This document shows positions 6,566-30,898 of a stretch of 64,000 nucleotides of DNA, piece after piece; position 1 is the first letter of the stretch; every line of letters starts with the position of its first letter. The notes beneath the pieces are model-generated. The model made no database searches and had not been told where the DNA came from. It was given only the letters and a program-made list of their open reading frames with translations. Where the stretch lies: NCBI GenBank assembly GCA_950097015.1, contig CATNEN010000031.1:2604001-2668000 (forward strand), given 5' to 3'. Source of the DNA: Macrostomum hystrix. Its lineage: Eukaryota; Animalia; Platyhelminthes. The position numbers were made by a program, and so were the translations under genes.

Positions 6566-9500
6566 TCAAAATTGCATGTTGCCAAACCACGAAATCACTG
6601 TGGTTAGCCTTTTCAAATAATCGTTGAATCTAATCGGGGGATTTACACGTTTTCTTGTGTTGTAGGGATGCGGAGCTCTCACTTCGTTCTCGCTTGCTGA
6701 GTCCAAGTCTTCCTCTGAGGTGTTAATGCTCTCGTGGCTATCGCTTTCGCTTTCGTTCGCGCCTTCCTCCTCTTCATTGTTTGTATTGTCAGACTGACTT
6801 GTTATGTCATCAATCTCAATTTCGGCTCCTAAATCTAACAAACTTCCTCTCATCTCACTTCCTTCGTTTCTATCTTGACATTGCCATGCAATTCTCTCAT
6901 CTTCCGATTCAGATTCTGAATGAATGACTTCTTCGATTTCCTTCCTCTCCCTCTGGCTTCCCTTAACTTTTCGTTCTGTCTTCTTTGGCTGACTTTTCTC
7001 CAGTTTGCTGGGCTGGCTTCCCTTAATTACTTCCTCCTTGGTTGAATTTGGCACAAGAGTTAGATTATCTCTATGAACCAGCAATATGTTGCCTACTGGC
7101 TTGCCATCTTCTTCCTTTTGCACTTTAAATACAACATCGGAGAATTGCTCAATTACTCGATAAGCGGATCGCTTTTTACGGTGAAATTTGTGCGATTCCT
7201 CGCTATCTAACTGAGGATTATTAATTAATGCTAAACATCCTATCGGCACTTCCTTTGGCAATTTATTTTTTTGCGCGAGTTCTTCTCTCTTGCTAGCTAC
7301 ATTCTCTAATTTCCTCTTGACTAATTCTCCTGCTATTCTGAGTCTCTCGGCATGATTGGCGACATAGGATGGATAATCGGCAAATGACTTAGATTCTTTG
7401 ATTTGATTGTCAATTGGCAATACAGCCTCTCTTCCAAACATCAGGAAATGGGGACTGTAACCAGTGGTCTTGTTTACACTTGTGCGCACGGCTACCAAAG
7501 CTGCTGGGATCATAAGGTCCCAATCTGCATGATCCTTTTCCACCAAGCAGGTAATGATGGATTTGATCTGCTTGTTGAATCTTTCAACCAGACCATTGCT
7601 TTGAGCGTGGTAAGGTGTTGTACACGTGTGTTTGACATTATACAGATCGCAGAACGCTTTAAATTGCTTACTGGTGAAAGTTTTTCCATTGTCTGTATGG
7701 ATCCAATGGCATTGGCCATACTCAGAAAACACTCTCTCCTGCAGTAGCTTTATGACAGTATCAGATTTTTGATTACGGACCGGGAAAGCGAAAGGGTATT
7801 TGGTAGTGCTGTCCACCACAGTTAACACGTACCGATGTCCTCGCCTACTTTCCTTAGATATAGGTCCAATTAAATCAATATGCAAACGATAAAATGGCTC
7901 ATTGACAGGGAATGATTGGATGGGTGCTTGCACATAGTGACCTTTCTTGCTCTCAAGACAAGGAATGCACTTGGCAATCAATTCTTCTATGGCTGTGACT
8001 AATCCTGGTCTCCAAAATCGTTTCCTCACTTTCTGGATGGTCTTATCTCTACCTAGATGTCCTGCTAGTGGGCTCTCGTGTAGATCGCTGAATGCTAGCG
8101 TGTCCATGGACTTGGGCAGAACGACCTTCCATTCTCCATCCTCCTTGATCATGAGTAATTCTTTCTCAATGCTCATGGCTTCAAATGCCTTGCTTAGCTG
8201 CTTTAACTCGGGGCTTACATTGCTCAACACTGGGGGTTTAGTTAGGCCTTCGCACTTCCATTCCATTAAGGTGTGAATCGCGGAGTCTGCACGTTGAGCC
8301 TCAATAATCTGCTCACGCTTCAGTGGGGTCGGTAAATAATCAGTCAGAAGCTTTTCACATTTACTTTCTACTGGCTCTGGCGTATCAATCTGTGGATTAG
8401 GATAGAATTCCTCAGCGCTCGGATTCAATTGCAAAATGCAGGAATCAGAATGAACACCTTGGGATTTTTCCTTCTCATTACCGGAAATCTGTGACTCGAT
8501 CCAACGATTGGGATCTAAGGTCGGAATTTCTCCTTCAATGGGAACAGTTGGCGACTGGGTCAGGCTCTCAGCACTGTCCTTAGTCATTGCCTGCTGATCA
8601 CTCTTTACGCATACGCGATCCTTCACTTCTGCGGGCTCTCTGCTTCTTTCCAATTCTTCGGCGGGTCTTCTGGATAGGCTATCAGCATTCTGATGAGAAC
8701 TGCCTTTCCTATGTTCGACATCAAATTGGAATTCATTCAATCGTTCTATCCATCTACCTAAAATGCCTTGTGCTTCGGTCTGACGTAATAACCAGATAAT
8801 CGCCTTATGATCGGTTCTAGCTAAAAATCGCTTACCTAACAAATAAAATCTGAAATGTTTCATCGCATCAACTAAAGCTAAAAGTTCTTTTCTAGTGATT
8901 GGATACCTTTTCTCGGACTCCTTCATTGCACGACTAAAATATGCGATTGGCCTCTCCACGCCATCAGATTGGATTTGGCCCAAGCAGGCGCCAATTCTAT
9001 TATCGCTGGCATCAGTATCGAGAACCATTCGCACATTCTCATCATCAACGAATTCTGGGTAAGCTAACACATCTGTGGACATCATCCGGGTTTTTAAAGC
9101 CTCGAATGCCTCATCGTGCATCACGCTCCATTTTCCTTGGAAATTCTGCACATTTTTCCGGGTGAGCTGGAATAATGGGTGAGCCACTTCGGCATAATTC
9201 TTCACAAAACGGCTATAATAATTACACAGACCGAGAAAACTTCTTAATTCCTTCACATCTTTCGGCTTCGGCCAAGTTCTGATAGCTTCGATCTTTGCAT
9301 CATCAGTACGAATGCCTTCAGTACTAATTACATGGCCTAGATACTTCAATTCTTGATGGAATAAATTACACTTCTTCGGTCTTAGCTTCAATCCTGCTGT
9401 AATTAGCCGTTGGAACACTTCCTTTAGATGTGCCAGATGATCGGCAAATGTTTTCGAATAGGTGACAATATCATCTATATAGGACATAGCAAACTGATGT

Positions 9501-11362
9501 TGTATTCCTAATAAAACTAAATTCATTAGGCGCTGAAATGTGCCTGGAGCATTAGATAAGCCCTGTGCCATTACCTCATACTCAAATTGGCCTCTAGTTA
9601 AAGTAGAAAACGCTGTCATAAACTTGTGCTCCTCCTTGATGGGCACTTGCCAATATCCGGAATTTAAGTCTAGACTGCTAAAATATTGGCTACCTGATAA
9701 ATAAGAAAAAGTCTGATGAATATTAGGCAACGGATACGGCACATAATTAACTCGCGAATTTAATACTCTGAAGTCGCTAACTATTCTAATTGTTCCATCC
9801 TTTTTCGGCACAATAACAAGTGGAGTAGAGTAAGTTGAATAACATGGGCGAATTAAATTTTTAGCTAACATATCGTCTAACTGCGCATCAACCTGCTTCT
9901 GAAGATGGGGTGGAATCCTTCTCGTGGGGATTCTAACAGGTGTTTCATCTTTCAGCGAGATTTCATGCGTGATCAGGTGAGTTAGACCCATGTCTAGTTC
10001 ATTCTGGGAGAATGCTTCGCGGTGTTCCTTCATCAAATCGATAACCGCTTTTCTCTGCTCTGTGGAGAGACCGGGTCCAATGCTGACCTCCTCAATCCAC
10101 GCATTCTCAACAGTTTGGGTCTGATTCACTTTAACAGCGGGTTCTGACTCTGTCTGCTCTTCAAAGTAATTCAGTTCTTTAGCCTTCATAGGTTTGGCTA
10201 AACCAATTAGGGCTGATTTCGGCAATTTGACATCGACAAGGTGTCGGTTTACAATTTCGACAATAGCGGAGCCTTCTCGCATAGTAACGAGGGTGGGGAT
10301 CATTTCTAATGTCCACTCTTTGGCTCTTACGCCTTCTCCGATAGCTTCAATGGTCATAGGTGTTCCATAGTTACACTCAGAATCCTTAGCCAAACGCACA
10401 GGAATCCTCAGTGCACTATTAGCTGGGATTACGACCTTCTCTTGGGTATAAACACGGCACACTTTAACTGGTAGGTGAGTGAATTGCATTGGAATGCATG
10501 ATCCTTCATGGAATACTAACATGCCCTTAGAAATGTTAATACTCTCACAATATCCAAGGAAGAACTCCATTCCAAGTATGTTGTCACACTCATGACTACA
10601 TAACAAGAAATCAATCTCAACCTGGATCTCGCCAAAGCGAACAAAAATGCAACTCTCTCCTTCCAATTGCACTCTAGTACCATCAAAGGTGGAAACTCTC
10701 TTATCCGTGTTCTTAATCCGATCAGGTTTAATCAACTTTGTCCAGACGGACTTACTCAGGAAGCTATTTCTGGCTCCCGTGTCCAGAATAAAGTTTACTT
10801 CAGTCTTCTTAATAGTTCCTACCACTACTGCTTCATAGCCTTCACGAACTAAATCTAATTTAGTATTAGAACAAGGTTTAAATGAGTTCTCACGTGTCCT
10901 TTGAGTCTTCTTGTTGCACTTTCCGACGAGAGTCCTTGGAACTGGCTCCGGCTCCTCGGGTGCTAGTTCTTCTTCCACTGACTCATCGAGTGTTGACACG
11001 ACTGCTGCTGACACAGACGAAACAGACGCTGACACAATGGGTGCTGATACGCGAGGTGCTGACGCAATGGGTGCTGATACACGAGGTGCTGACGCAATGG
11101 GTGCTGATACGCGAGGTGCTGACGCAATGGGTACTGATACACGAGGTGCTGACGCATAAAGTGCATGACGCTTCCCAGTCTGATAAAAGCATTGGGACTT
11201 CACAGGATAACAATTTGACTGGGAGGCCGGAAGTTCGAATCTGAGATTTCTGGAGGGGCGTGGCCTCGACTGGCGTCCCTCGACATTCAGTTTCCCCGAT
11301 TCTGATACTGATTCTGGGGCTGAAACTGTTTCTGAGGCGGATACTGCCTTGAGCTGTGGCAA
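6566..11362 (-). CDS. pol: Gypsy Pol (protease-RT-RNase H-integrase), expressed by -1 frameshift from gag
   Basis: Protease ILDTGA; RT YIDD; RNase H DTDAS..ELLA..TDH; integrase HHCC (LHES..GH..CIPC) and DDE (HIDLIGP, HTDNG, GLVERFN). Domain order is Ty3/Gypsy. Confidence 0.96.
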   Translation of the reverse strand: MPQLKAVSASETVSAPESVSESGKLNVEGRQSRPRPSRNLRFELPASQSNCYPVKSQCFYQTGKRHALYASAPRVSVPIASAPRVSAPIASAPRVSAPIASAPRVSAPIVSASVSSVSAAVVSTLDESVEEELAPEEPEPVPRTLVGKCNKKTQRTRENSFKPCSNTKLDLVREGYEAVVVGTIKKTEVNFILDTGARNSFLSKSVWTKLIKPDRIKNTDKRVSTFDGTRVQLEGESCIFVRFGEIQVEIDFLLCSHECDNILGMEFFLGYCESINISKGMLVFHEGSCIPMQFTHLPVKVCRVYTQEKVVIPANSALRIPVRLAKDSECNYGTPMTIEAIGEGVRAKEWTLEMIPTLVTMREGSAIVEIVNRHLVDVKLPKSALIGLAKPMKAKELNYFEEQTESEPAVKVNQTQTVENAWIEEVSIGPGLSTEQRKAVIDLMKEHREAFSQNELDMGLTHLITHEISLKDETPVRIPTRRIPPHLQKQVDAQLDDMLAKNLIRPCYSTYSTPLVIVPKKDGTIRIVSDFRVLNSRVNYVPYPLPNIHQTFSYLSGSQYFSSLDLNSGYWQVPIKEEHKFMTAFSTLTRGQFEYEVMAQGLSNAPGTFQRLMNLVLLGIQHQFAMSYIDDIVTYSKTFADHLAHLKEVFQRLITAGLKLRPKKCNLFHQELKYLGHVISTEGIRTDDAKIEAIRTWPKPKDVKELRSFLGLCNYYSRFVKNYAEVAHPLFQLTRKNVQNFQGKWSVMHDEAFEALKTRMMSTDVLAYPEFVDDENVRMVLDTDASDNRIGACLGQIQSDGVERPIAYFSRAMKESEKRYPITRKELLALVDAMKHFRFYLLGKRFLARTDHKAIIWLLRQTEAQGILGRWIERLNEFQFDVEHRKGSSHQNADSLSRRPAEELERSREPAEVKDRVCVKSDQQAMTKDSAESLTQSPTVPIEGEIPTLDPNRWIESQISGNEKEKSQGVHSDSCILQLNPSAEEFYPNPQIDTPEPVESKCEKLLTDYLPTPLKREQIIEAQRADSAIHTLMEWKCEGLTKPPVLSNVSPELKQLSKAFEAMSIEKELLMIKEDGEWKVVLPKSMDTLAFSDLHESPLAGHLGRDKTIQKVRKRFWRPGLVTAIEELIAKCIPCLESKKGHYVQAPIQSFPVNEPFYRLHIDLIGPISKESRRGHRYVLTVVDSTTKYPFAFPVRNQKSDTVIKLLQERVFSEYGQCHWIHTDNGKTFTSKQFKAFCDLYNVKHTCTTPYHAQSNGLVERFNKQIKSIITCLVEKDHADWDLMIPAALVAVRTSVNKTTGYSPHFLMFGREAVLPIDNQIKESKSFADYPSYVANHAERLRIAGELVKRKLENVASKREELAQKNKLPKEVPIGCLALINNPQLDSEESHKFHRKKRSAYRVIEQFSDVVFKVQKEEDGKPVGNILLVHRDNLTLVPNSTKEEVIKGSQPSKLEKSQPKKTERKVKGSQRERKEIEEVIHSESESEDERIAWQCQDRNEGSEMRGSLLDLGAEIEIDDITSQSDNTNNEEEEGANESESDSHESINTSEEDLDSASENEVRAPHPYNTRKRVNPPIRFNDYLKRLTTVISWFGNMQF

Positions 11363-15270: not shown

Positions 15271-15755
15271 GACACCTACATGGCTCAGGTTAGGGGCTTG
15301 TCATGCACATTATGCCCTTTAGACCCAACTTAGGCACAGTGAATGTGTACACCACCTGACAATCCAAAAGTCAGGGCAGATCTACCATACCCACCTATGT
15401 AAGCATAGGCCTGAGTAAAGTGTACTTAGAACTATCCATTTATCTAAACTATAGTCAGAAAAAAGAATGAAAGACCAATGATCATGAGAAAGGACCTTCT
15501 AATTCCTGCCAAGCATTACATAAATCTCTAGTAGGTTTCTGTCATTTTGATATAACTATGTGAGCCTTGGCCAACTTTATTTAGCTATCCTAAGTCTTAT
15601 TACTCAATCTGGCTAGTTTCTTGTCCTTGGATCTAAAGCTTGTATTTAGATTTATAAGGTTTATTGCTTTACTTAAATTCTAAAATAGTTATAAAATGTT
15701 AAGGGTAATGTTGGAAAACTCACAAGCTTCACAATCCCATCCATTTTGCAGCATC

Positions 15756-16963
15756 ATGGAATTTCCTGAACTTGGCCAGCACTGCGCCGACCAGTCCTGC
15801 AAGCAGCTGGACTTTCTACCACTGCGCTGCGACCTCTGCCAGAACATCTATTGCAAGCTGCATTTCGCCTACGCCAGCCATTCTTGCCCACAGGCCTACA
15901 AGAAGCAGAATCAGGTGCCGGCCTGTCCACTGTGCTCCAGGCCAATCCCGGTGGCTCCTGGCGAGGATGCCAACGCTGTGGTTGGCCGGCACATGGACAC
16001 AGACTGCGGCTCGGAGCCTGCCCAGCGGCATCGTAAACGGGCCGGCCGCTGTTCAGCTACTGGCTGCAAGACTCGCGAACTGGTGCCCGTCACCTGTCCC
16101 ACCTGTAGGCAGAATTTCTGTGTGAAACACAGACTAGAGCAGGATCACAAGTGCGCTGGTTTTCAGGTGAGCAATTGGCTAATATTTTTCTGTCCTTTTT
16201 AATGGTCTAAGTGCACGGACTAGTGTAGTGGAGTGGCCACGAAAAGGAGATGGAGTTACTCGTATTTGGGGCGCAGCCGCGGAGAGAAGGCTTGTCGTGC
16301 AATTTACGCCCTTGGAGGCACAGTGAGAGTGTGCACTGCCTGACGATGATGCACACACCCCTGTGTGAGTGTGGGCCTGTGTGCGTGTGTACTCAGGAGT
16401 CCGCGAAATGGGCAGAATTGCCTCCTCGCTGGCTGCGGGTCTAGTGTCACCTAGTGATGTGCCATTGTCCGCAGCCCTCCTGCAATTATTATAATAATTT
16501 TATCTCCTAATGAGATGAGGTAATCTCTCCCTTATCTTCTGCGCCACCCACTATTATTGTCCCGTAGCTTAGGAGTTGACCTTTTCTTACCAAATTTCAC
16601 TTTCAGAATTCCGGTCGCGCAGTTACTAATGCCGCAGCTGCTGCTGTTGCTAGGCAAAAACAACAGCAGCAGCAGAGGCGCCAGTCGCCGCTGCCCAACC
16701 TTCGCGATGCTCAGGTCGGTCTGTCAGACCACGAGGCGCTGCAGATGGCGCTCCGGATGTCCGCTGCCGAGGCCGCCGCCAGTGGAGCTTCCACCGCCAC
16801 CGCAGCCGCGTCTGCCGATGCTGAACAGCGTCGGCGCCAGGAAGAGCTGGACAGGCAGCTGGCCGAGTCGCTGCAGGCTAGCGAGAGGCAACAGCGGCAG
16901 CAGCAGCAGCAGCAGCGGGGTCAGCAGTCAGGCAGCGATGCCAGCAGCTGCGCAATGTCCTGA
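15756..16963 (+). CDS. ZFAND2B: AN1-type zinc finger protein 2B / AIRAPL (exons 15756-16166 and 16607-16963; ~255 aa)
   Basis: Starts MEFPELGQHC, with two AN1 fingers and a C2H2-like CPLC..H..C. Exon 2 carries two UIM-like helices (SDHEALQMALRMS, QEELDRQLAESLQAS) and a terminal CaaX (CAMS*). GT/AG sites are in phase 0. Confidence 0.92.
16235..16499 (+). other. Dispersed structured element, copy 1 (SINE-like or ncRNA-like), in the ZFAND2B intron
   Basis: Block-wise similarity to 28860-29127; shared 5' GGCCACG and AT-rich 3' tail. Confidence 0.75.
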
Positions 16964-17649: not shown

Positions 17650-19590
17650 GTTTGACTATTCATTCTGACATTTCTGATCCCTCTGACTATTCATTCTGAC
17701 ATTTCTGATCCCTCTGACTATTCCTTCTGACATTTCTGATCCCTCTGACTAGTCATTCTGACATTTCTGATCCCTCTGACTATTCTGACATTTCTGATCC
17801 CTATGACTATTCCTTATGACATTTCTGATCCCTCTGACTATTCATTCTGACATTTCTGATCCCTCTGACTATTCCTTATGACATTTCTGATCCCTCTGAC
17901 TATTCCTTATGACATTTCTAATCCCTCTGACTATTCCTTATGACATTTCTGATCCCTCTGACTATTCTATGACATTTCTGATCCCTCTGACTATTCTATG
18001 ACATTTCTGATCCCTCTGACTATTCTATGACATTTCTGATCCCTCTGACTATTCCTTATGACATTTCTGATCCCTCTGACTAGTCATTCTGACATTTCTG
18101 ATCCCTCTGACTATTCCTTATGACATTTCTGATCCCTCTGACTATTCATTCTGACATTTCTGATCCCTCTGACTATTCCTTATGACATTTCTGATCCCTC
18201 TGACTATTCCTTATGACATTTCTAATCCCTCTGACTATTCCTTATGACATTTCTGATCCCTCTGACTATTCTATGACATTTCTGATCCCTCTGACTATTC
18301 TATGACATTTCTGATCCCTCTGACTATTCTATGACATTTCTGATCCCTCTGACTATTCCTTATGACATTTCTGATCCCTCTGACTAGTCATTCTGACATT
18401 TCTGATCCCTCTGACTATTCTGACATTTCTGATCCCTCTGACTATTCCTTATGACATTTCTGATCCCTCTGACTATTCATTCTGACATTTCTGATCCCTC
18501 TGACTATTCATTCTGACATTTCTGATCCCTCTGACTATTCCTTATGACATTTCTGATCCCTCTGACTATTCCTTATGACATTTCTAATCCCTCTGACTAT
18601 TCCTTATGACATTTCTGATCCCTCTGACTATTCTATGACATTTCTGATCCCTCTGACTATTCTATGACATTTCTGATCCGTCTGACTATTCCTTATGACA
18701 TTTCTGATCCTTCTGACTATTCCTTATGACATTTCTAATCCCTCTGACTATTCCTTATCACATTTCTGATCCCTCTGACTATTCTATGACATTTCTGATC
18801 CCTCTGACTATTCCTTATGACATTTCTGATCCCTCTGACTATTCCTTATGACATTTCTAATCCCTCTGACTATTCCTTATCACATTTCTGATCCCTCTGA
18901 CTATTCTATGACATTTCTGATCCCTCTGACTATTCCTTATGACATTTCTGATCCTTCTGACTATTCCTTATGACATTTCTGATCCCTCTGACTATTCCTT
19001 ATGACATTTCTGATCCCTCTGACTATTCTATGACATTTCTAATCCCTCTGACTATTCTATGGCATTTCTAATCCCTCTGACTGTTCCTTATGACATTTCT
19101 AATCCCTCTGACTGTTCCTTATGCCATTTCTGATCCCTCTGAATATTCTATGACATTTCTAAACTCTCTGACTATTTTATGACATTTCTAATCCCTCTGA
19201 CTATTTTATGACATTTCTAATCCCTCTGACTATTTTATGACATTTCTAATCTCTCTGACTATTTTATGACATTTCTAATCTCTCTGACTATTTTATGACA
19301 TTTCTAATCCCTCTGACTATTCCTTATGACATTTCTGATCCCTCTGACTATTCCTTATGACATTTCTAAACTCAATGACTGTTCCTTATGACATTTCTAA
19401 TCCCTTTGACTATTCTATGACATTTCTAATCCCTCTGACTCTTCCTTATGACATTTCTAATCCCTCTGACTGTTCCTTATGACATTTCTAAACTCTATGA
19501 CTGTTCCTTATGACATTTCTAAACTATATGACTGTTCCTTATGTCATTCTAATCCCTATGCCTTTTCCCTCTGCCATTCTGATCCTATGA
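17650..19590. repeat. ~29-33-bp minisatellite (GACATTTCTGATCCCTCTGACTATTCCTTAT)n
   Basis: Direct reading; ~1.9 kb, degenerating at the 3' end. Confidence 0.95.
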
Positions 19591-19707: not shown

Positions 19708-22700
19708 ATGTTCTCATCGATGGTCTCCGTTGCCAATGGCAACAGTGACAGCCATCGCGATGACAACAGCAACGGAAACAGCAGCAGCTGCGGTCGCCAG
19801 GATCAGAAGGCGCCAATTGCTGGCCACAGCCAGGAGCAGCAAGACGATGCAGCAGAAGAGAAGGACAAGCCGCCAGACCAGCAGCAGCAGGAGCAACTGC
19901 GAGAGACGCTTAACCAGCTGGCGGTGCAAATTCGCAGTCTCCAGGTGAGTGCTTTATCCTAAATATTATCTCCCCAGTCTCATCTCATCTCTCGCCTGTC
20001 CCATCTCTCTCCTGTCCCATTTCTCCCCTGTTTCATCTCTCTCCTGTCTCATCTCTTACCTGTCTCATCTCTTACCTGTCCCATCTCCCCTGTCTTATCT
20101 CATCTCTCCCTGTCCCATCTCTCTCCTGTCCCATTTCTCCCCTGACTCATCTCCCCTGTCTCATCTCTCCCCTGACTCATCTCCCCTGTCTCATCTCTCC
20201 CCTGACTCATCTCCCCTGTCCCATTTCTCCCCTGACTCATCTCCCCTGTCCCATTTCTCCCCTGACTCATCTCCCCTGTCCCATTTCTCCCCTTACTCAT
20301 CTCTCCTGTCCCATTTCTCCCCTGACTCATCTCCCCTGTCTTATCTCTCCCCTGACTCATCTCCCCTGTCTCATCTCTCCCCTGACTCATCTCCCCTGTC
20401 CCATTTCTCCCCTTACTCATCTCTCCTGTCCCATTTCTCCCCTGACTCATCTCCCCTGTCTTATCTCTCCCCTGACTCATCTCCCCTGTCTCATCTCTCC
20501 CCTGACTCATCTCCCCTGTCTCATCTCTCCCCTGACTCATCTCCCCTGTCCCATCTCTCCCCTGACTCATCTCCCCTGTCTCATCTCTCCCCTGACTCAT
20601 CTCCCCTGTCCCATCTCTCCCCTGACTCATCTCCCCTGTCCCATTTCTCCCCTGACTCATCTCCCCTGTCCCATCTCTCCCCTGACTCATCTCCCCTGTC
20701 CCATTTCTCCCCTTACTCATCTCTCCTGTCCCATTTCTCCCCTGACTCATCTCCCCTGTCTTATCTCTCCCCTGACTCATCTCCCCTGTCTCATCTCTCC
20801 CCTGACTCATCTCCCCTGACTCATCTCCCCTGTCCCATTTCTCCCCTTACTCATCTCTCCTGTCCCATTTCTCCCCTGACTCATCTCCCCTGTCTTATCT
20901 CTCCCCTGACTCATCTCCCCTGTCTCATCTCTCCCCTGACTCATCTCCCCTGTCTCATCTCTCCCCTGACTCATCTCCCCTGTCCCATCTCTCCCCTGAC
21001 TCATCTCCCCTGTCCCATCTCTCCCCTGACTCATCTCCCCTGTCCCATCTTTTACCTGTCCTATCTCTCCCGCCCGAGTTGAAGATATAGAGAAAAACCA
21101 GCAGAGGTTGACCCAAACCAAGGATCACAGGCCAGTTTCATATCTATGAATCGCATTCAGTTCGAATCATCATCGCGCCATTAAACTTCCAACCGTCGTT
21201 GCCAGTTAGCCGAGGCGGACAGTTTCGACGATGCCGCGCTAAAATTCGCCTTCGAGATCACCCGGATGAGCTTTCACAAGGGCGAAACTGCGGTCATCGG
21301 CCAGCTGGAGCAGGTGTTCATTCGGGAGGACTACCTCACAGTGTACACCCGCCTACTGCAGCAGTGCCAACGGCGCACCTGGCCAGGTGTAGCCACCGCT
21401 AGCCTGGTTCGCCTCAGCGACACTGTGTGGAACCTAACTCACCTGAGTGTGCGCATCTGCCAGGAGCTGGTTGGACTGGACCTCATTCGCCATGTGAGGC
21501 TAGTTTTCTAATCCGAATCTCGATTCCCAAATAAACTTCTTAATCCTTTCAACATAATTCTCTATCTTATTCCTCATCATTAATTCTTAATTCTCAATGG
21601 AATTTCTTACTCACATATTCATCCCCAAATCCCAAATCAATCCAAAATCCCTCTCCATCCCAGTTAAACCCCCTAATTCCATCTCCATCCAGTGGGATCT
21701 CCTAATCCCAACTCCACCCACTGGGATCTCCTAACCCCATCTCCACCCACTGGGATCTCCTAATCCCATCTCCACCCACTGGGATCTCCTAACCCCACCT
21801 CCACCCACTGGGATCTCCTAACCCCATCTCCACCCACTGGGATCTCCTAACCCCATCTCCACCCACTGGGATCTTCTAACCCCATCTCCACCCACTGGGA
21901 TCTCCTAATCCCATCTCCACCCACTGGGATCTCCTAATCCCATCTCCTTCCACTGGAACCTCCTAATCCCATCTCCACCCAGTGGGATCTCCTAATCCCA
22001 TCTCCTTCCACTGGAACCTCCTAATCCCATCTCCACCCACTGGAACCTCCTAATCCCATCTCCACCCACTGGAACCTCCTAATCCCATCTCCCCATTGGC
22101 GCGCAATCCAGGTACTGGGCGCCCTTAGCCACTGCGACCGGGACAGTCTGAAGGATGCCAGGGCGCGCCGGTTGTGCAACGGCCTGCTGAGCGTGCTGCA
22201 CAATGTGATCCGGGCTCTGCCTCACGCCAGGGCCTGCTACCGCATTCCCGGCTACAGTGTTGTTGACGTACTCAAACACTTCCTGTGCGACAGCCTAAAC
22301 GCCTACGTCTACACCAAGGTGCTGCTGGTGCTGAGCTTTGTAGTCACCGAGGAGGAGAACCGCTGGCTGAATGTCAGCGACGAGCACATCCGCCTGCTGA
22401 TGCGTGACCTGCGCCAGACACTGGAGGCCAGCAGCTCCGGGCCGCATTTCTGTCCCAAGCTGGGCTATCAGTGCGACGAACTATTGCAGGGCGTTGACAA
22501 CCTGTGCGGCTGCGACTTCAATAAGTCGCGCTTCGTTGCCAACGGCCTGCTGGAGCTAATTGAGGACCTGCTGGTGCGCGGCGCTCCGGACAACTCCGAG
22601 CTGCAGTTTGGCGTTGAGATTGTCTACCACCTGGCCTTCGATGACGTCTGTCGCGAGGGCATCTGCCAGAGGCGCAGCCTTGTTGATCACCTGACCAAAC

Positions 22701-25700
22701 TGGCCAACGATTGTCGGATCAAGGATGTGCGGCGCAGCGCCTGCGGCACCCTGTGGAAGCTGCACGGCCACGGACTGTGCGCTACGCCAACTAGCACCCG
22801 GGCCATGCCTCTGTTCTCATTGGCTGAGCGGAGCCCGAATCCGGTGGTGTCCGCCGGACACGTCATGCTGTCCTATCAGCACGCCAGCCAGGACACAGTC
22901 CTGCTGATTAGAAAGCGGTTGCAGATGGAGGGCTACGAGGTAGGTTGCTTCTCTGTCAGAGGAATCCGATCCCGCTCCGCCTGTCCTGTACAGTATTCTG
23001 ATCCCGCTCCGCCTGTCCTGTACAGTATTCTGATCCCGCTCCGCCTGTCCTGTACAGTATTCTGATCCCGCTCCGCCTGTCCTGTACAGTATTCTGATCC
23101 CGCTCCGCCTGTCCTGTACAGTATTCTGATCCCGCTCCGCCTGTCCTGTACAGTATTCTGATCCCGCTCCGCCTGTCCTGTACAGTATTCTGATCCCGCT
23201 CCGCCTGTCCTGTACAGTATTCTGATCCCGCTCCGCCTGTCCTGTACAGTATTCTGATCCCGCTCCGCCTGTCCTGTACAGTATTCTGATCCCGCTCCGC
23301 CTGTCCTGTACAGTATTCTGATCCCGCTCCGCCTGTCTTGTACAGTTTTCTGATCCCGCTCCGCCTGTCCTGCAGAGGATTCTGATCCCACCGAGGAGGA
23401 TTCTGATCCCACCGAAGAGGATTCTGATCCTACCGATAAGTTTTCCGATCCCACCGATGATGATTCTGATCCGACCGAGGAGGATTCCGATCCCACCGAT
23501 GATGATTCTGATCCGACCGAGGAGGATTCCGATCCCACCGATGAGGATTCTGATCCGACCGAGGAGGATTCTGATCCCGCCGAGGGGGATTCTGATCCCA
23601 TAATGGCCTTTCCTATAGAAAGGATTCTGATCCCACCTATCTACTCCTGCAAAATAATCTGATAGCGATAGCGCACTCAGTAATATCTGCACTTACTGTT
23701 CTTTGCCTCTCCCCAGGTGTGGCTAGACATTGAGAACATGAGCCAGAGTATTGTGTCCAAGATGGCCGAGGCTGTTGAGAACTCAGCCGTCATCCTGATG
23801 TGCATGAGCCAGAGCTACAAGAACAGTCCGCACTGCCGGCACGAGGCCGACTATGCCTACAAGCTGCAGAAGCCCATTGTGCCCCTGGTGATGGAGCCCA
23901 AGTACCAGCCAGACGGCTGGCTTGGCCTGCTCATGGGCTCCAAGATGTTCTACGACTTCTCAGACGAGGATCAATTTGAGCAGAGCTTCACTAATCTGCT
24001 CAAAGAGCTCGGCGGACGCGGCAAAGCGCGCCAGATTGACGCCTCCGGCTTGGCGATGAGCGGCGTCGGGGGCGTCGGCAACCTCCAGCCGTTGCAGCAC
24101 TCGATGCGTGTCCATGCCGAGGGCAGCCGCGAGGGCACGCCGTGTGGCTCAGAGGGTCGGCTCTATGCCAAGCATCGCAGCCAGCACACCGCCTCGTTCC
24201 TGGCCTGGACAGCGGCTGATGTGGCTAACTGGCTAGCTGAGAACCAGCTGTCCGAGTACTTTGCTCAGTAAGTCAATAATTCTGGTTAGCCCCATGAATA
24301 CAGTACCGTCACAAGCGGCGTTTTATACTCCTTTCAAACGCCTCATTTATGACTCATCTGACCGTCTAACGACTCAAACACAATTTTTAACGACTCAAAC
24401 GCCTCTATCAACTCAAACGCCTCTCTATCAACTCAAATGCTCCTCTATCAACTCAAACGCCTCTCTATCAACTCAAATGTCCTCTATCAACTCAAACGCC
24501 TCTCTATCAACTCAAACGCCTCTCTATCAACTCAAACGCTCCTTTATCAACTCAAATGCTCCTCTATCAACTCAAACGCCTCTCTATCAACTCAAACGCT
24601 CCTTTATCAACTCAAATGCTCCTCTATCAACTCAAACGCCTCTCTATCAACTCAAACGCCTCTCTATCAACTCAAACGCTCCTTTATCAACTCAAATGCT
24701 CCTCTATCAACTCAAACGCCTCTCTATCAACTCAAATGTCCTCTATCAACTCAAACGCCTCTCTATCAACTCAAACGCCTCTCTATCAACTCAAATGCTT
24801 CTCTATCAACTCAAATGCTCCTCTATCAACTCAAATGCTCCTCTATCAACTCAAACGCCTCTCTATCAACTCAAATGCTTCTCTATCAACTCAAATGCTT
24901 CTCTATCAACTCAAATGCTCCTCTATCAACTCAAATGCTCCTCTATCAACTCAAACGCCTCTCTATCAACTCAAATGCTTCTCTATCAACTCAAATGCTT
25001 CTCTATCAACTCAAACGCTCCTCTATCAACTCAAACGCCTCTCTATCAACTCAAATGCTCCTCTATCAACTCAAACGCTCCTCTATCAACTCAAATGCTC
25101 CTCTATCAACTCAAACGCTCCTCTATCAACTCAAACGCTCCTCTATCAACTCAAACGCTTCTCTATCAACTCAAACGCTCCTCTATCAACTCAAATGCCT
25201 CTCTATCAACTCAAACGCTCCTCTATCAACTCAAATGCTTCTCTATCAACTCAAACGCTCCTCTATCAACTCAAATGCTCCTCTATCAACTCAAATGCTC
25301 CTCTATCAACTCAAACGCCTCTCTATCAACTCAAATGCTTCTCTATCAACTCAAATGCTTCTCTATCAACTCAAATGCTCCTCTATCAACTCAAATGCTC
25401 CTCTATCAACTCAAACGCCTCTCTATCAACTCAAATGCTTCTCTATCAACTCAAATGCTTCTCTATCAACTCAAACGCTCCTCTATCAACTCAAACGCCT
25501 CTCTATCAACTCAAATGCTCCTCTATCAACTCAAACGCTCCTCTATCAACTCAAATGCTCCTCTATCAACTCAAACGCTCCTCTATCAACTCAAACGCTC
25601 CTCTATCAACTCAAACGCTTCTCTATCAACTCAAACGCTCCTCTATCAACTCAAATGCCTCTCTATCAACTCAAACGCTCCTCTATCAACTCAAATGCTT

Positions 25701-26493
25701 CTCTATCAACTCAAACGCTCCTCTATCAACTCAAATGCTCCTCTATCAACTCAAATGCTCCTCTATCAACTCAAACGCCTCTCTATCAACTCAAATGCTT
25801 CTCTATCAACTCAAATGCTTCTCTATCAACTCAAACGCTCCTCTATCAACTCAAACGCCTCTCTATCAACTCAAATGCTCCTCTATCAACTCAAACGCTC
25901 CTCTATCAACTCAAATGCTCCTCTATCAACTCAAACGCTCCTCTATCAACTCAAACGCTCCTCTATCAACTCAAACGCTTCTCTATCAACTCAAACGCTC
26001 CTCTATCAACTCAAATGCTTCTCTATCAACTCAAACGCTCCTCTATCAACTCAAACGCTCCTCTATCAACTCAAACGCTCCTCTATCAACTCAAACGCTC
26101 CTCTATCAACTCAAACGCTCCTCTATCAACTGAAACGCCTATCTGTCAATTCAAATGTCTCTCTATTAAGTCGAAGGCCTCTCAAACAGCTAACCGAGAG
26201 GTCTGGAGTTCGAATCCCACAGTTCGCTATATCCAATAGTACAATAGCCTATATGGAATAGCCATGCAGCAGTAAATCTTGCCCAACTAAGCTTAGGTGT
26301 ATAATTTATAATTCTCCTCTCCGTAACCCGCAGCTTCGCTGACGTCAGCGGCGAGCTGCTGTTCGAGCTGCACCACATGCAGGCGCACGCGCCCGAAGCT
26401 TTCTACGCCAGTCTGCGAAAACAGCTGGGCATGCGGCTGGCCGACATGCTGCGCATGAGTCGCGCCCTGCACCGGCTATCAGCGTCTACTTAG
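19708..26493 (+). CDS. ARM-like / TIR / SAM domain protein (~687 aa); exons 19708-19944, 21206-21493, 22112-22939, 23717-24267, 26334-26493
   Basis: All four introns are GT..AG with consistent phases (0,0,0,2). Helical ARM-like region (VWNLTHLS.., LLSVLHN.., SACGTLWKL). TIR_2-type domain HVMLSYQH..VWLDIENM..AVENSAVILMCMSQSYKNSPHCRHEADYA. C-terminal SAM-like WTAADVANWL..FADVSGELLFEL. Confidence 0.88.
19965..21062. repeat. ~20-bp pyrimidine-rich minisatellite (CCCTGACTCATCTCCCCTGT-type) in intron 1 of the TIR gene
   Basis: Direct reading. Confidence 0.93.
21680..22095. repeat. 29-bp minisatellite (GGGATCTCCTAACCCCATCTCCACCCACT)n in intron 2
   Basis: Direct reading. Confidence 0.93.
22965..23600. 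repeat. 32-bp (TCTGATCCCGCTCCGCCTGTCCTGTACAGTAT)n merging into a 21-bp (GATTCTGATCCCACCGAGGAG)n array, intron 3
   Basis: Direct reading; the switch is at ~23376. Confidence 0.93.
24385..26150. repeat. 20-bp minisatellite (CTCTATCAACTCAAACGCTC)n in intron 4
   Basis: Direct reading; explains three long repeat ORFs. Confidence 0.96.
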
Positions 26494-27019: not shown

Positions 27020-27480
27020 AATCCCGTGAATAGTATATACAGTAGTTTAGGGAAATCCCGTGAATAGTATTTTTTAGTAGTTTAGGGGAATCCCATGAAT
27101 AGTCATTTTATTAGTTTAGGGGAATCCCGTGAATAGTCATTTTAGTAGTTTAGGGGAATCCCATGAATAGTCATTTTATTAGTTTAGGGGAATCCCGTGA
27201 ATAGTCATTTTAGTAGTTTAGGGGAATCCCGTGAATAGTCATTTTAGTAGTTTAGGGGAATCCCATGAATAGTCATTTTAGTAGTTTAGGGGAATCCCGT
27301 GAATAGTCTTTTTAGTAGTTTAGGGGAATCCCAGGAATAGTCTTTTTAGTAGTTTAGGGGAATCCCATGAATAGTCTTTTTAGTAGTTTAGGGGAATCCC
27401 ATGAATAGTCTTTTTAGTAGTTTAGGGGAATCCCGTGAATAGTATATCCAGTAGTTTAGGGGATACCTGTGAATAGTACA
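27020..27480. repeat. 34-bp minisatellite (GGGGAATCCCATGAATAGTCATTTTAGTAGTTTA)n
   Basis: Direct reading. Confidence 0.93.
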
Positions 27481-28314: not shown

Positions 28315-30898
28315 TCAGTCGGCCGATCGCCACAGGCGCCGCAAATCCCGCTTCAACAGTCGATAATCCGTGTCGCTGAGCAGCAGCAGTTCGCCCGTGT
28401 CCGGGCAGACCTCGTACTGGCCGATTGCCGCATCGCTTCCGCTGCTCCGCGCCTCGTCGACTCGAACCACGCGCGGCCTGGCGTAGCAGGGCAGTCTGGA
28501 CTCGAAGGCTTGGCGAATTCTTGCACCCAGCTGGCGCCGGCAGGACTCGTTGAGGAAGTCGGCGGCGCTGCTCCCGGAAGCTGCCTCTTCTGGGAAGCCG
28601 ATGGCGCCTCGGCTGCACACCGTGTAGGCGACCTCGCCGGCCGCCAGGTGGCCCTCGTCCTCGGGCTGGGCGGCGATGCAGGACAGCCGGCAGCGGGACT
28701 GGCACTCAGGCAACAGGCCGGACAGGATGGACCTCAGCTGCGATGTGGCAGATCGATGGGGCGGTGCTGGTGTGGGATGCGGTGTCTGGGGGTTCGACTG
28801 ACAGCGGTCTGACGCGTTTGCCTCTCGCGCCAAGGCGCCTGAGCTCGATTTCACGGCGAGGCCACGTTCACTTGGGTTGGGGCGCAGCCGCGAAGAGAAG
28901 GCTTGGGGGCTTCTCGTGCAATTGTCGGGCCAACCTCCAAGGCACCGTGAGAGTGCACACTGCCTGACGATGAGAAAGTCAGGGCAGATGTACACACCTG
29001 TGAACGGTATCTGTGTCGGGAGTCAGCGAAATGGGCAGAATTGCCTCCTCGCTGGCTGTAGGTGTAGTGTATCACCAAATGATAGGCCATTGCCGCAGCC
29101 CTCATGCAATTATTTTTATAATTATTACGGTATCTTAGGTTCCCTGTTGCCTAGGGATGGCAGGACCAAGGGGTGAACGGCAATGCCATCGAGGCTCATC
29201 CTTCTCACCTCTATATGAGCTGCGCTGTCTCCCGGCCTCCAATAGCTGCTCTGGTGTACTGGAGGCGCCATTAGCTCCGTGAGGCTGCCCTGCCGTCCCA
29301 CAATGAGCGGCGCCCCCAGCCAGTGCCTCCAGGCGTCACCTGGTTGAAACACGCCGGTCAGTCGGTTGGGCAGCTCAATCGCTGCGGCCTTGGCAGCCGG
29401 AGAGTCTTCGCTGGCAAACAGCGGCAAGGCGATGTCGCCGGGCCGAGCCTGGCGCCCCCAGACCGGCAGGCCGGTTTCCGCCGACACCCGCAGCAGCCGC
29501 AGCGGCGCCCAGCCGGGTAGCCACATCGGCTGGAAGCCGACTGACACCTGGCCGCCTTCGTCGCCTTCGCTAAGCAGATTGTCGCTGGCCATGAAACCCG
29601 GCGCGCCTGCGCAGGCTCCGCCGAGTTCAACCAGCTCTTCGAGGTTGAAGCGCTCGGCTGTCAGCAGCCGGCGGCAGTCGGCGGACAGGCCGCGGCCCAG
29701 CAGGCGAGTTGTCGAATGCAGACGATCGGTTGGCCGTTTCGGACGGCGGGTGAACTCGGCAGCGAGGAAGCCGTCGTAGAGACCCGCTGTGCAGCCGTAC
29801 CTGTCAACCGTGTTTGCGCGCAGCCTGCTCAGTTGATTCTGCTGCGAGTACTAATCGTAAGTTATCTGCGCCACTACTCTATCGAGTGTGGGTTGTGTCT
29901 GTGCATTTGTGCTCAAGCTTTTGGCAGTCTCACCTGGCGCAGTCTGTCCAGTAGCCAATCGGGGAGCAGTCGCTGCGCAGCACGCAGGTGGCGCCTTCGG
30001 TGATAGTGAGGCCGATGCCGGCAGCTGAGGCCAGAGCCGTGTGCATCGGCTGGCAGATGTACAGGACATCCTGCCGGCCCAGCTCCAGCAGCAGGCGCGG
30101 CAGGGCCGCCAGCTGCAGATAATCGGCGTGCGTCAACTGCAGCCGGCGGCCAGCCTCTGACACAGTCAGTAGCGGCGCGCCCAGAGGTTGTCGCGCGGTC
30201 AGCTGAGTCGGCGGTGTCGGCGTCTCGGTTTGTGCGGCGAGCAGCTCCGCTTCCAGTCGGAGGGCGCCGGGCAAGCGTGGCAGCTGGCCCGGCTCGCCGT
30301 GGCTGCTCAGCAGCAAACTGAGATGTCGCAGCAGCGGTAAAGCGGACAGAAGCGCGAGCTCCGCTTCAGCCTCGTAGACGAGAGCTGACAATCGACGCAG
30401 TCGTCGCCGGCGAAGACAGACATCGGCGTCCACGTCACCCGGATCTTCGGCATCGATCAGAACAGCGGAGCAGCCGGCCTTGGCGGCTGCGAGCCACAGG
30501 GCGGTGTGCAGAGGCGACGGTCGAATGGCCACGCCGACAGCCGCTCCGGCGGGCAGCCTGCTGGCAAAGAACTCGGCCAGCCGGGTCACCAGGTCAGCCA
30601 CCAGGCTGAAGGTCCAAACTTCGTCATCGGCCACAAAGCAGGCCTTCTCTGGCAGCGTTGCCACCGTTGACTCAAAAGTAGCCACAATGTCGACAGGCGG
30701 CTGGGTTCTTCTCGGCCTACTGAATCCGGCCAGGTAGTAGAACGCGTCTCGTTGGAAGGTTGCGCCCAGGTCCAACAGCCAGCGACGCCAGTGCACGATC
30801 AGCAGCAGAATAGGCGCGATTATCAGTGCCGGCAGTAGGACTGAGGACATGTGCGCGCCGAGGAGGCCATTGATAGCCTCCTCTGCCCAGGCCGACAT
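28315..30898 (-). CDS. Highly divergent FATP/SLC27 (very-long-chain acyl-CoA synthetase)-like protein, ~659 aa; exons 30898-29934, 29800-29209, 28737-28315
   Basis: N-terminal membrane anchor; PEKACFVADDEVWTF; LWLAAAKAGCSAVLI; DVLYICQPMH; YWTDCARYGCT; VFQPGDAW; LPCYARPRVVR. All are colinear with FATP. Splice phases (2,0) give an intact frame. Confidence 0.8.
28860..29127 (+). other. Dispersed structured element, copy 2, antisense within intron 2 of the FATP-like gene
   Basis: Matches 16235-16499 in conserved blocks. Confidence 0.75.

What the first reader, a model, noticed from the sequence alone, without database searches (positions are those of the whole stretch)
19708..26493. SARM1-like parts in a permuted order: ARM-TIR-SAM with an intact catalytic glutamate
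SARM1/TIR-1 is ARM-SAM-SAM-TIR, a NAD+ hydrolase autoinhibited by its ARM domain. This intact five-exon gene has an ARM-like helical region, then a bacterial-like TIR_2 domain (SY..., WLD, CxxE in CRHEA, the position of the NADase Glu), then one C-terminal SAM-like domain. It has no transmembrane segment, LRR or death domain, so it is neither a TLR nor MyD88. It may be a cytosolic sensor-NADase in which SAM polymerisation clusters the TIR from the other side: an under-characterised invertebrate immune or cell-death module (inference).
Basis: partly seen in the sequence, partly recalled or inferred. Interest (0 to 1): 0.7.

Follow-up and report, generated by a model that had tools for sequence, protein, structure and literature searches.

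The report
Flatworm ARM-TIR-SAM gene, conserved family
This is a real, transcribed five-exon flatworm (Macrostomum) gene for a cytosolic armadillo-TIR-SAM protein; it belongs to an old animal family that immune-gene surveys list as "ARM-TIR" but nobody has characterised, and it keeps the glutamate that SARM1-type NAD-cleaving TIR domains need, so it is a reasonable but untested candidate for a second animal TIR enzyme.

Summary
Observation confirmed. The gene has five GT-AG exons on the + strand (19708-19944, 21206-21493, 22112-22939, 23717-24267, 26334-26493), about 687 codons. Spliced transcript contigs from four public runs of one study confirm all four introns.

Pfam finds TIR_2. Profiles of 55-63 homologues match armadillo-repeat proteins (Vac8 2e-30, beta-catenin 1e-18) and SAM domains, with SARM1 SAM1 the best single SAM. 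AlphaFold on the 90%-identical M. lignano orthologue gives ARM 59-392, TIR 421-550 and SAM 603-680, joined by disordered linkers. There is no membrane segment, LRR or death domain.

The glutamate in CRHEA (codon 23843-23845) aligns with the catalytic Glu of TIR-1/SARM1. It is Glu in 58 of 59 family members.

The gene is not an oddity. It is the syntenic orthologue of an annotated M. lignano gene, under strong purifying selection (dN/dS 0.05-0.18). Relatives occur in corals, lophotrochozoans, echinoderms, hemichordates and amphioxus. The Aplysia member is already catalogued as "ARM-TIR".

It is not a SARM1 orthologue. The domain order differs, there is one SAM rather than two, and the ARM region is a generic armadillo repeat.

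NADase activity, autoinhibition and an immune role remain inference. The scan noted a second ARM-TIR-SAM gene elsewhere in this genome (s1-382020).

Verdict: new member of a known but uncharacterised kind.

The parts
19708..19944 (+). Exon 1: start codon and 79 codons of low-complexity, Q/D/E-rich N-terminus. Its last ~20 codons form the first helix.
   Evidence: The ATG at 19708 and the GT donor at 19945 are read. The exon is only 44% identical to M. lignano. The matching part of the model is disordered, pLDDT under 50 for residues 1-49. Transcript contigs carry the end of exon 1 directly before exon 2 (table 7).
21206..21493 (+). Exon 2: 96 codons, the first armadillo-like helices.
   Evidence: The joint 21493>22112 (GT..AG) is seen in spliced contigs of three runs; in the fourth run (X5) the same 618-base skip is placed four bases upstream, 21489>22108. 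dN/dS is 0.18 against M. lignano. Helices 87-180 of the model cover this part.
22112..22765 (+). Exon 3, first 218 codons: the main armadillo-repeat region.
   Evidence: The family profile hits Vac8 at 1.9e-30, ODAD2/ARMC4 at 1.8e-23 and beta-catenin at about 1e-18 over profile positions 140-380. Pfam Arm is found in 32 of 63 homologues. Foldseek matches designed ARM proteins and APC. dN/dS is 0.05.
22856..22939 (+). Exon 3, last 28 codons: start of the TIR domain (strand A with the invariant S-Y, helix A).
   Evidence: Family-invariant H, M, S, Y, L and G are present at exon 3 residues 250-274. TIR_2 profile positions 1-27 lie here in the orthologue.
23717..24010 (+). Exon 4, first ~98 codons: the rest of the TIR domain (strand B to helix E).
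   Evidence: Pfam TIR_2 scores E 6.7e-15 over residues 2-94. The TIR-only model has pLDDT 88, with Z 17.6 to SPARTA TIR-APAZ and Z 16.0 to SARM1 TIR. The joint 22939>23717 is seen in all four runs.
23843..23845 (+). GAG codon for the Glu at the position of the catalytic glutamate of TIR NADases (motif C-R-H-E-A).
   Evidence: It aligns with the Glu of TIR-1 'HKE', Cat1 'WDE' and plant TIR 'CLDE'. It is Glu in 58 of 59 family members and Gln in one.
24011..24205 (+). Exon 4, middle: a disordered linker between TIR and SAM.
   Evidence: pLDDT is under 50 for orthologue residues 558-603. Family members show no conservation here.
24206..24267 (+). Exon 4, end: first helices of the SAM domain (both conserved Trp). 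The exon ends in phase 2.
   Evidence: Both SAM-profile Trp residues are present in the exon 4 translation. The GT donor lies at 24268. The loose end after 24267 equals the start of exon 5.
26334..26493 (+). Exon 5: the remainder of the SAM domain and the TAG stop.
   Evidence: The SAM-only family profile hits liprin-beta at 1.5e-14, SARM1 SAM1 at 5e-8, and SMS1, Shank and TEL. Model helices 603-680 have pLDDT above 90. dN/dS is 0.11.
19984..21037 (.). Intron 1 minisatellite: 30-bp unit, 35 copies.
   Evidence: Tandem Repeats Finder. No transcript contig covers it. Similar arrays fill the other three introns: 21672-22092, 22968-23600 and 24393-26138.

Best explanation
What is shown. The stretch is an active, spliced, protein-coding gene of a Macrostomum flatworm. 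It encodes a soluble protein of about 687 residues. The parts in order are a disordered acidic/Gln-rich head, about eight armadillo repeats, a 25-residue flexible linker, a TIR_2-type TIR domain, a roughly 45-residue flexible linker and one C-terminal SAM domain. It is the flatworm orthologue of an ARM-TIR-SAM family that goes back at least to the cnidarian-bilaterian ancestor.

What is inferred about mechanism.
- The SAM domain self-associates and raises the local concentration of the TIR domains.
- TIR-TIR contacts through the BB-loop then build a composite active site around the conserved Glu.
- That site cleaves NAD+ to nicotinamide plus ADPR or a cyclic ADPR. The effect would be NAD+ depletion or production of a nucleotide signal.
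- The armadillo domain keeps the Asn/Lys ladder typical of peptide-binding ARM grooves. It acts as the regulatory or ligand-binding part, holding the TIR off in cis or recruiting a partner.

I put gene, architecture and family membership at about 0.95. I put the NAD+-cleaving mechanism at about 0.5. The confidence score below refers to the mechanism.
For: Gene and expression: spliced contigs in four runs confirm all introns, and the exons are collinear with M. lignano proteins.

Orthology:
- The neighbours are the same in M. lignano: a zf-AN1 gene upstream and an AMP-binding gene downstream on the other strand.
- dN/dS is 0.05-0.18 at dS of about 0.9.
- A quick ML tree places Macrostomum with trematode and monogenean members inside a lophotrochozoan clade. 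That clade is sister to a deuterostome clade, with corals outside.

Architecture.

Enzyme reading:
- Glu is present at the catalytic position in 58 of 59 members.
- The BB-loop region reads Y-x-V-W-x-D-V-D-x-M-x-G, against Y-R-V-F-I-D-V-D-K-L-x-x-G in TIR-1. It includes the Asp that matches SARM1 D594 and lacks the Pro of scaffold TIR BB-loops (D594/G601 roles from PMC8635717).
- The significant sequence matches in the PDB are mainly enzymatic TIRs (Cat1, SARM1/TIR-1, RPS4, RPPT, Roq1). No TLR, MyD88 or IL-1R chain reaches E 0.01.
- The best structural matches are SPARTA TIR-APAZ NADases at Z 17.6.
- Flatworms are reported to lack TLRs (PMC7958881), so a TLR-adaptor role has no receptor in this lineage.
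- A SAM domain next to a TIR is the arrangement SARM1 uses for oligomerisation (PMC8635717).
Against: - No biochemical data exist for any member of the family (literature searches).
- A Glu at this helix-C position also occurs in TIRs without reported NADase activity, such as the W-C-x-x-E motif of TLR TIR domains. This rests on my own knowledge and was not tested here. The Glu is therefore necessary but not sufficient.
- The BB-loop Gly is Gly in 51 of 59 members and corresponds to SARM1 G601, whose G601P mutation abolishes activity. It is Gln in this gene and in M. lignano.
- Structural similarity to scaffold TIRs is nearly as high as to the enzymes: Hydra TRR-2 Z 16.9, MyD88 15.1, IL-1RAcPb 15.6.
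- The ARM domain shows no specific likeness to SARM1's allosteric ARM, so NMN/NAD+ sensing cannot be assumed.
- SAM self-association and ARM-TIR contact were not modelled.
Confidence: 0.5

Rival explanations
1. Non-enzymatic scaffold or adaptor. The TIR only nucleates TIR-TIR assemblies, as in MyD88/MAL. The SAM and ARM domains recruit kinases or ubiquitin ligases. The conserved Glu is structural.
For: The immune-gene catalogues place ARM-TIR proteins under 'TLR adaptor molecules'. The TIR model is nearly as similar to the scaffold TIRs TRR-2, MyD88 and IL-1RAcPb as to the enzymes. The BB-loop Gly is replaced in this species. Canonical ARM repeats are protein-binding modules.
Against: The Glu is near-invariant across more than 600 My of divergence, together with a SARM1-like and Pro-less BB-loop. 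No scaffold TIR of vertebrates reaches significance against the family profile. Flatworms are reported to lack TLRs and IL-1R, so no upstream receptor is known.
Confidence: 0.35
2. A divergent SARM1 orthologue. The gene would be the flatworm's SARM1 with shuffled domains, doing SARM1's job (axon degeneration, p38 signalling).
For: SARM1 is the top Foldseek hit for the whole model at 1.7e-6. SARM1 SAM1 is the best single-domain SAM match. One amphioxus member is auto-named 'NAD(+) hydrolase SARM1' in UniRef.
Against: The domain order is different, there is a single SAM, and the ARM is not SARM1-like. The same ARM-TIR-SAM family exists in Aplysia, for which SARM genes are listed separately from the ARM-TIR-only members. 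The whole-model TM-score to SARM1 is only 0.19-0.26.
Confidence: 0.05
3. Mis-assembled or non-functional locus: a pseudogene, or a chance ORF chain among repeats.
For: The introns are packed with minisatellites, and long spurious ORFs run through them.
Against: Spliced transcripts exist. All exons are intact with GT-AG borders. dN/dS is 0.05-0.18. Synteny is conserved.
Confidence: 0.01

Closest known systems
Invertebrate 'ARM-TIR' TIR-domain-containing proteins (oyster, Zhang et al. 2015, PMC4346834; Aplysia immunome 2022, PMC9334734). Probably also one of the 'ecTIR-DC' families of Gerdol et al. 2017, a paper not held in the library, so that link is unchecked.
   Same: The family is the same. 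The Aplysia homologue found here (LOC101851026, P0019/P0170) is on that paper's ARM-TIR list. Shared features are an N-terminal armadillo region, a TIR_2 domain, a cytosolic location and an unknown function.
   Different: In the passages I read, those catalogues define the class by ARM plus TIR and do not mention a SAM domain or the Glu. Here the SAM region aligns in 55 of 63 members, and the Glu is present in 58 of 59. The phyletic range, corals to amphioxus, was worked out here.
SARM1 / dSarm / TIR-1 (ARM-SAM-SAM-TIR NAD+ hydrolase)
   Same: It has the same three domain classes. The Glu lies at the aligned catalytic position. The BB-loop is similar: D-V-D/E-K, a hydrophobic residue, x-x-G, and no Pro. 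Its SAM is most like SARM1 SAM1 among single solved SAM domains.
   Different: The order is ARM-TIR-SAM, there is one SAM instead of a ring-forming tandem, and the ARM is of the generic beta-catenin/Vac8 type with no detectable match to SARM1's ARM. TIR identity is 15-20%. It is not an orthologue.
Prokaryotic TIR NADases (SPARTA TIR-APAZ, CRISPR-associated Cat1, AbTir)
   Same: Cat1 is the best sequence match at 5e-9, and SPARTA TIR-APAZ is the best structural match at Z 17.6. All belong to the Pfam TIR_2 class.
   Different: The partner domains are entirely different, and identity is about 19-20%. The margins over animal TIRs are small: Z 17.6 against 16-17.
M. lignano proteins A0A1I8IB28, PAA70194.1 and PAA63082.1 ('TIR domain-containing protein' / hypothetical)
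   Same: They are syntenic orthologues or homeologues with the same five exons. Identity is 86-92% in exons 3-5.
   Different: dS is about 0.9 and exon 1 is only 44% identical, so the window comes from another Macrostomum species or an old duplicate and not from the deposited M. lignano assembly.

Membership tests
ARM-TIR(-SAM) family of invertebrate TIR-domain proteins | Armadillo repeats N-terminal to the TIR | tested here: met
   The family profile hits Vac8 at 1.9e-30 and beta-catenin at 1e-18. The model shows a helical repeat at 59-392. Foldseek finds ARM matches. Exon 3 itself finds the family at E down to 3e-20.
ARM-TIR(-SAM) family of invertebrate TIR-domain proteins | TIR_2 domain with the family motifs (H-V-M-I-S-Y, V-W-x-D, C-R-x-E-A-x-Y-A, D-G-W-L-G) | tested here: met
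   The window matches the commonest family residue at 31 of the 34 columns that are at least 80% conserved. The exceptions are Trp>His, BB-loop Gly>Gln and Leu>Val. TIR_2 scores E 6.7e-15.
ARM-TIR(-SAM) family of invertebrate TIR-domain proteins | C-terminal SAM domain | tested here: met
   The SAM-only profile hits solved SAM domains at 1.5e-14 to 1e-6. The window keeps both Trp residues, the Gly and the Pro of the profile. The region aligns in 55 of 63 members.
ARM-TIR(-SAM) family of invertebrate TIR-domain proteins | Orthology: synteny and tree position | tested here: met
   The flanking genes are the same as in M. lignano. The gene groups with trematode and monogenean members at SH-aLRT 92 in a quick tree.
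SARM1 / TIR-1 orthologues | Domain order ARM-SAM-SAM-TIR with a C-terminal TIR | tested here: not met
   The order is ARM, TIR, SAM in the model and in Pfam coordinates.
SARM1 / TIR-1 orthologues | Tandem SAM domains forming the octameric ring | tested here: not met
   There is one SAM of about 78 residues and no second one. The oligomeric state is not testable here.
SARM1 / TIR-1 orthologues | SARM1-type ARM domain with an NMN/NAD+ allosteric pocket | tested here: inconclusive
   The family profile matches SARM1 chains only through the SAM. No ARM stretch passes E 0.01, while generic ARM proteins score 1e-18 to 1e-30. The pocket residues were not compared.
Enzymatic (NAD+-cleaving) TIR domains | Glutamate at the catalytic position in helix C | tested here: met
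   Codon 23843-23845 aligns with the TIR-1, Cat1 and plant TIR Glu. It is Glu in 58 of 59 members.
Enzymatic (NAD+-cleaving) TIR domains | BB-loop able to form the BE interface (SARM1 D594, G601 equivalents) | tested here: inconclusive
   The Asp equivalent is present (57 of 59 members and the window). The Gly equivalent is Gln in the window and in M. lignano, and Gly in 51 of 59 members.
Enzymatic (NAD+-cleaving) TIR domains | Measured NAD+ cleavage that depends on self-association | not testable with these tools
   This needs a recombinant protein assay. No published assay was found for this family.
Toll-like receptors / IL-1R / MyD88 | Transmembrane segment with LRR or Ig ectodomain, or a death domain | tested here: not met
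   The highest 19-residue hydropathy is 1.46. Pfam gives no LRR, Ig or Death hits at E up to 1 (exons) or 0.01 (orthologue).

The most novel reading that the evidence does not exclude
ARM-TIR-SAM proteins are a second, ancient family of animal TIR enzymes. They would date to the cnidarian-bilaterian ancestor, and no vertebrate or ecdysozoan member was seen among the roughly 30 homologues whose source organism I looked up. They would be independent of SARM1. A peptide-binding armadillo sensor would release a SAM-clustered TIR, which consumes NAD+ or makes a cyclic-ADPR-type signal. This would give TLR-less animals such as flatworms a plant- or bacteria-like TIR immune or cell-death switch.
Probability: 0.35. 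Interest if true: 0.75.

Novelty: new member of a known kind. Interest (0 to 1): 0.45.

Why it matters

This family keeps the catalytic-position Glu in 58 of 59 members, from corals to amphioxus. It pairs the TIR with an oligomerisation domain and a ligand-binding repeat. That is the same logic as in SARM1, plant TNLs and bacterial TIR systems, built from different pieces.

Macrostomum lignano is a laboratory flatworm, and flatworms are reported to lack TLRs. A Glu-dependent NADase assay plus a knock-down there would show whether animals have a second TIR enzyme pathway.

If the protein turns out to be a plain scaffold, the result is an ordinary annotation of a catalogued gene family.

Tried and rejected
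- Pfam and PDB sequence searches with single window exons. The ARM and SAM parts stay under threshold (HEAT_EZ 0.059, SAM_3 0.12). The PDB search gave only chance-level DARPin/ankyrin hits for exon 3. Family profiles were needed.
- Word search with exon 3 found nothing. Its length filter of 152-483 aa excludes the full-length relatives, so this is not evidence of absence.
- Word search with the 63-sequence profile returned only P0001. Only the 8000 candidates sharing most words were scored, and I suspect low-complexity words filled that cap. It gives no information on taxon range, so absence from vertebrates and ecdysozoans rests only on the roughly 30 named hits I looked up and is weak.
- The whole-model Foldseek alignment to SARM1 has an E-value of 1.7e-6 but a TM-score of only 0.19-0.26. 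It reflects shared domain classes, not a shared arrangement.
- Ranking TIR structures to decide enzyme against scaffold: the margins are too small to decide (Z 17.6 SPARTA, 16.9 TRR-2, 16.0 SARM1, about 15 MyD88).
- Literature: no functional study of an ARM-TIR-SAM protein was found. Gerdol et al. 2017, which defines the ecTIR-DC families, is not in the library, so the family number could not be checked.
- A TIR tree with SARM1, TLR and bacterial outgroups was not built, because no referenced outgroup sequences were at hand.
- The stored M. lignano orthologue P0001 served as stand-in for folding.
Full report
**1. The gene is real**

Reading the sequence gives five exons on the + strand:

| Exon | Coordinates | Content |
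|---|---|---|
| 1 | 19708-19944 | 79 codons |
| 2 | 21206-21493 | 96 codons |
| 3 | 22112-22939 | 276 codons |
| 4 | 23717-24267 | 183 codons plus 2 bases |
| 5 | 26334-26493 | 1 base, 52 codons, TAG |

All four introns begin with GT and end with AG. No exon piece holds a stop. The split codon across intron 4 reads CAC.

The introns are largely minisatellite arrays with units of 20-32 bp. These arrays produce the long spurious ORFs seen.

Macrostomum lignano proteins of 677-684 aa align to the window in five collinear blocks at exactly these exons.

Contigs from four public runs of one study are 99+% identical to the window.
- They skip 21494-22111 and 22940-23716. In one run the first skip is drawn four bases upstream.
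- They continue upstream into the last bases of exon 1 and downstream into the first bases of exon 5.
- The runs are therefore transcript data, all four introns are confirmed, and the gene is expressed.
- Two synonymous variants, at 21391 and 26349, travel together in two of the runs.

**2. Organism and orthology**

An exhaustive HMMER search with exon 3 found one cluster at 92% identity. That cluster holds four M. lignano proteins named 'TIR domain-containing protein' or 'hypothetical'.

The M. lignano locus (L001, NIVC01001259.1) has the same neighbours as the window:
- a ZFAND2-like zf-AN1 gene upstream (window 15696-16202);
- an AMP-binding enzyme gene on the opposite strand downstream (window about 28315-30898).

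Exon-by-exon codon comparison with L001:

| Exon | dN/dS |
|---|---|
| 2 | 0.18 |
| 3 | 0.05 |
| 4 | 0.09 |
| 5 | 0.11 |

dS is about 0.9. Exon 1 is too diverged and gapped to score. The window therefore comes from a Macrostomum that is not the deposited M. lignano assembly, either another species or an old duplicate. ARM, TIR and SAM are all under strong purifying selection.

**3. Domains**

*TIR.* On the window's own exons, Pfam sees TIR_2 in exon 4 (E 6.7e-15, profile positions 28-121). The first 27 profile positions lie at the end of exon 3, so the TIR is split by intron 3.

*ARM and SAM on single exons.* These are under threshold (HEAT_EZ 0.059, SAM_3 0.12).

*Family level.* I aligned 63 full-length homologues (A1).
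- All 63 carry TIR_2 and 32 carry Pfam Arm. SAM_1, SAM_2 and SAM_3 are found in 12, 9 and 16.
- The A1 profile hits armadillo proteins in the PDB very strongly: designed ARM 3e-35, Vac8 1.9e-30, ODAD2 1.8e-23, beta-catenin about 1e-18.
- It hits SARM1/TIR-1 only through the SAM region.
- A SAM-only profile (A3) hits liprin-beta (three SAMs, 1.5e-14), SARM1 SAM1 (5e-8, the best single domain), SMS1, Shank and TEL.

I therefore did not join the window's exons, and folded the stored M. lignano orthologue P0001 with A1 as its alignment.
- The model has pLDDT 81 and pTM 0.68.
- Residues 1-49 are disordered.
- A helical repeat spans 59-392, a TIR 421-550 and a five-helix SAM 603-680.
- Disordered linkers lie at 395-417 and 558-603.
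- Foldseek returns SARM1 and designed or natural armadillo proteins.

*What is absent.* There is no membrane-spanning stretch and no LRR, Ig or death domain.

**4. The TIR and its glutamate**

A TIR-only profile (A2, 59 sequences) gives these PDB matches:

| Match | E-value |
|---|---|
| CRISPR-associated NADase Cat1 | 5e-9 |
| Bacterial SEFIR protein | 5e-5 |
| TIR-1 / SARM1 | 5e-5 to 1e-4 |
| RPS4 | 2e-4 |
| Plant RPPT TIR | 1e-3 |
| Hydra TRR-2 | 2e-3 |

No TLR, MyD88 or IL-1R chain reaches 0.01.

In these alignments the family's C-R-x-E Glu sits on the Glu of TIR-1 'HKE' and of Cat1 'WDE'. In one search the window's own exon 4 puts it on the 'CLDE' Glu of a plant TIR.

The Glu is present in 58 of 59 members (one Gln). 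In the window it is codon 23843-23845.

The stretch after strand B reads like TIR-1's BB-loop: Y-x-V-aromatic-x-D-V-D-x-hydrophobic-x-x-G, with no Pro.
- The Asp that matches SARM1 D594 is kept.
- The Gly that matches G601 is Gln in Macrostomum, and Gly in 51 of 59 members.
- The roles of D594 and G601 are taken from PMC8635717.

The TIR-only model has pLDDT 88. Its structural matches are close together:

| Match | Z |
|---|---|
| SPARTA TIR-APAZ | 17.6 |
| Hydra TRR-2 | 16.9 |
| SARM1 TIR | 16.0 |
| IL-1RAcPb | 15.6 |
| MyD88 | 15.1 |
| Plant TIRs | about 14.5 |

The fold is a standard TIR, and structure alone does not separate enzyme from scaffold.

**5. The family**

Named homologues come from many phyla:
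- Flatworms: Macrostomum, Opisthorchis, Clonorchis, Paragonimus, Protopolystoma
- Molluscs: Sinanodonta, Dreissena, Aplysia, Patella, Nucella
- An annelid: Owenia
- A brachiopod: Lingula
- A bryozoan: Watersipora
- Echinoderms: five classes
- Hemichordates: Ptychodera, Saccoglossus
- Amphioxus
- Pocillopora corals

A quick ML tree (midpoint-rooted, SH-aLRT only, careful search not finished) roughly follows the animal phylogeny.
- Macrostomum groups with the trematode and monogenean members.
- That group sits inside a lophotrochozoan clade.
- The lophotrochozoan clade is next to a deuterostome clade, and the corals lie outside.

This points to vertical descent from at least the cnidarian-bilaterian ancestor.

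I saw no vertebrate, arthropod or nematode member among the roughly 30 named hits. That is weak evidence, because my attempt at a broader named list failed.

**6. What is already known**

- The Aplysia member found here (LOC101851026) is on the 'ARM-TIR' list of the Aplysia immunome paper (PMC9334734 supplement). That paper takes the class from the oyster genome paper (PMC4346834).
- An amphioxus TIR-SAM combination with cDNA support was reported in 2008 (PMC2575513).
- 'Evolutionarily conserved TIR-DC' families that are absent from vertebrates are attributed to Gerdol et al. 2017. I could not read that paper.
- Flatworms are reported to lack TLRs but to keep TIR-domain proteins (PMC7958881).
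[quoted passage not shown] That is a label, not a test.
- I found no functional or biochemical study of the family.
- The scan has noted another ARM-TIR-SAM gene and a tandem TIR pair elsewhere in this genome.

**7. How it probably works**

Shown:
- an expressed, constrained, soluble ARM-TIR-SAM protein;
- flexible tethers on both sides of the TIR;
- a conserved Glu at the catalytic position;
- a SARM1-like BB-loop;
- canonical armadillo repeats with the conserved Asn/Lys positions of peptide-binding grooves (N205, N311 and K312 near-invariant).

Inferred:
- SAM self-association concentrates the TIRs.
- TIR-TIR contacts form the active site and NAD+ is cleaved.
- The ARM domain gates this by binding the TIR in cis or by binding a ligand.

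I give the enzyme reading about 0.5 and a non-catalytic scaffold about 0.35.

Against the enzyme reading:
- A Glu at this position is also found in TIRs with no reported NADase activity (my own knowledge, not tested).
- The BB-loop Gly is replaced in this species.

**8. Relation to SARM1**

It works with the same kinds of parts but is not a member. The order differs, there is one SAM, and the ARM is a generic armadillo domain with no detectable match to SARM1's. The TIR is as close to bacterial TIRs as to SARM1. 'SARM1 permuted' is a fair description of the look, not of the descent.

**9. Verdict**

The gene is a new member of a catalogued but uncharacterised family. Interest is moderate: it is a well-defined, testable candidate for a second animal TIR enzyme, in an organism where the test is feasible.

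Noticed in passing
window 19984-21037, 21672-22092, 22968-23600, 24393-26138 (also 19000-19568 and 27020-27478): Every intron of the gene, and both flanks, are filled with minisatellite arrays with units of 20-34 bp and 11-88 copies. They are strongly C/T-rich on the + strand (GC skew down to -0.59). Arrays with the opposite skew lie at about 36-42 kb. They create long false ORFs of up to 666 aa.
   Followed up: partly
window 15696-16202 (+) and about 28315-30898 (-): The neighbours are a ZFAND2-like gene with two AN1 zinc fingers and an AMP-binding (acyl-CoA synthetase-like) gene. The same two genes flank the orthologue in M. lignano contig NIVC01001259.1, so the block is syntenic.
   Followed up: yes
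window 60389-63907 (-): An intact 1172-aa Ty3/Gypsy-type pol ORF with zf-CCHC, RT, RNase H and integrase. A second long ORF at 6566-11362 (-) was not analysed here; the scan's notes mention a Gypsy element there.
   Followed up: partly
window 21391 and 26349: Two synonymous differences (A>G in exon 2, C>T in exon 5) occur together in the transcript contigs of runs X2 and X3 but not X4 and X5. They point to two alleles or near-identical copies in the sampled animals.
   Followed up: no
proteins P0012, P0018, P0021, P0023 (630-716 aa, from ENA/Logan assemblies): In a subgroup of hits the region similar to this gene's armadillo part lies at the C-terminus. For P0012 and P0018, the two scanned, no TIR or any Pfam domain is detected. 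It may be a different architecture sharing the ARM module.
   Followed up: partly
same genome, other pieces (scan notes s1-382020, s1-402543): The scan lists a second ARM-TIR-SAM gene (3447 letters, so more compact) and a tandem TIR pair elsewhere in this genome. This flatworm therefore has several non-TLR TIR genes.
   Followed up: no
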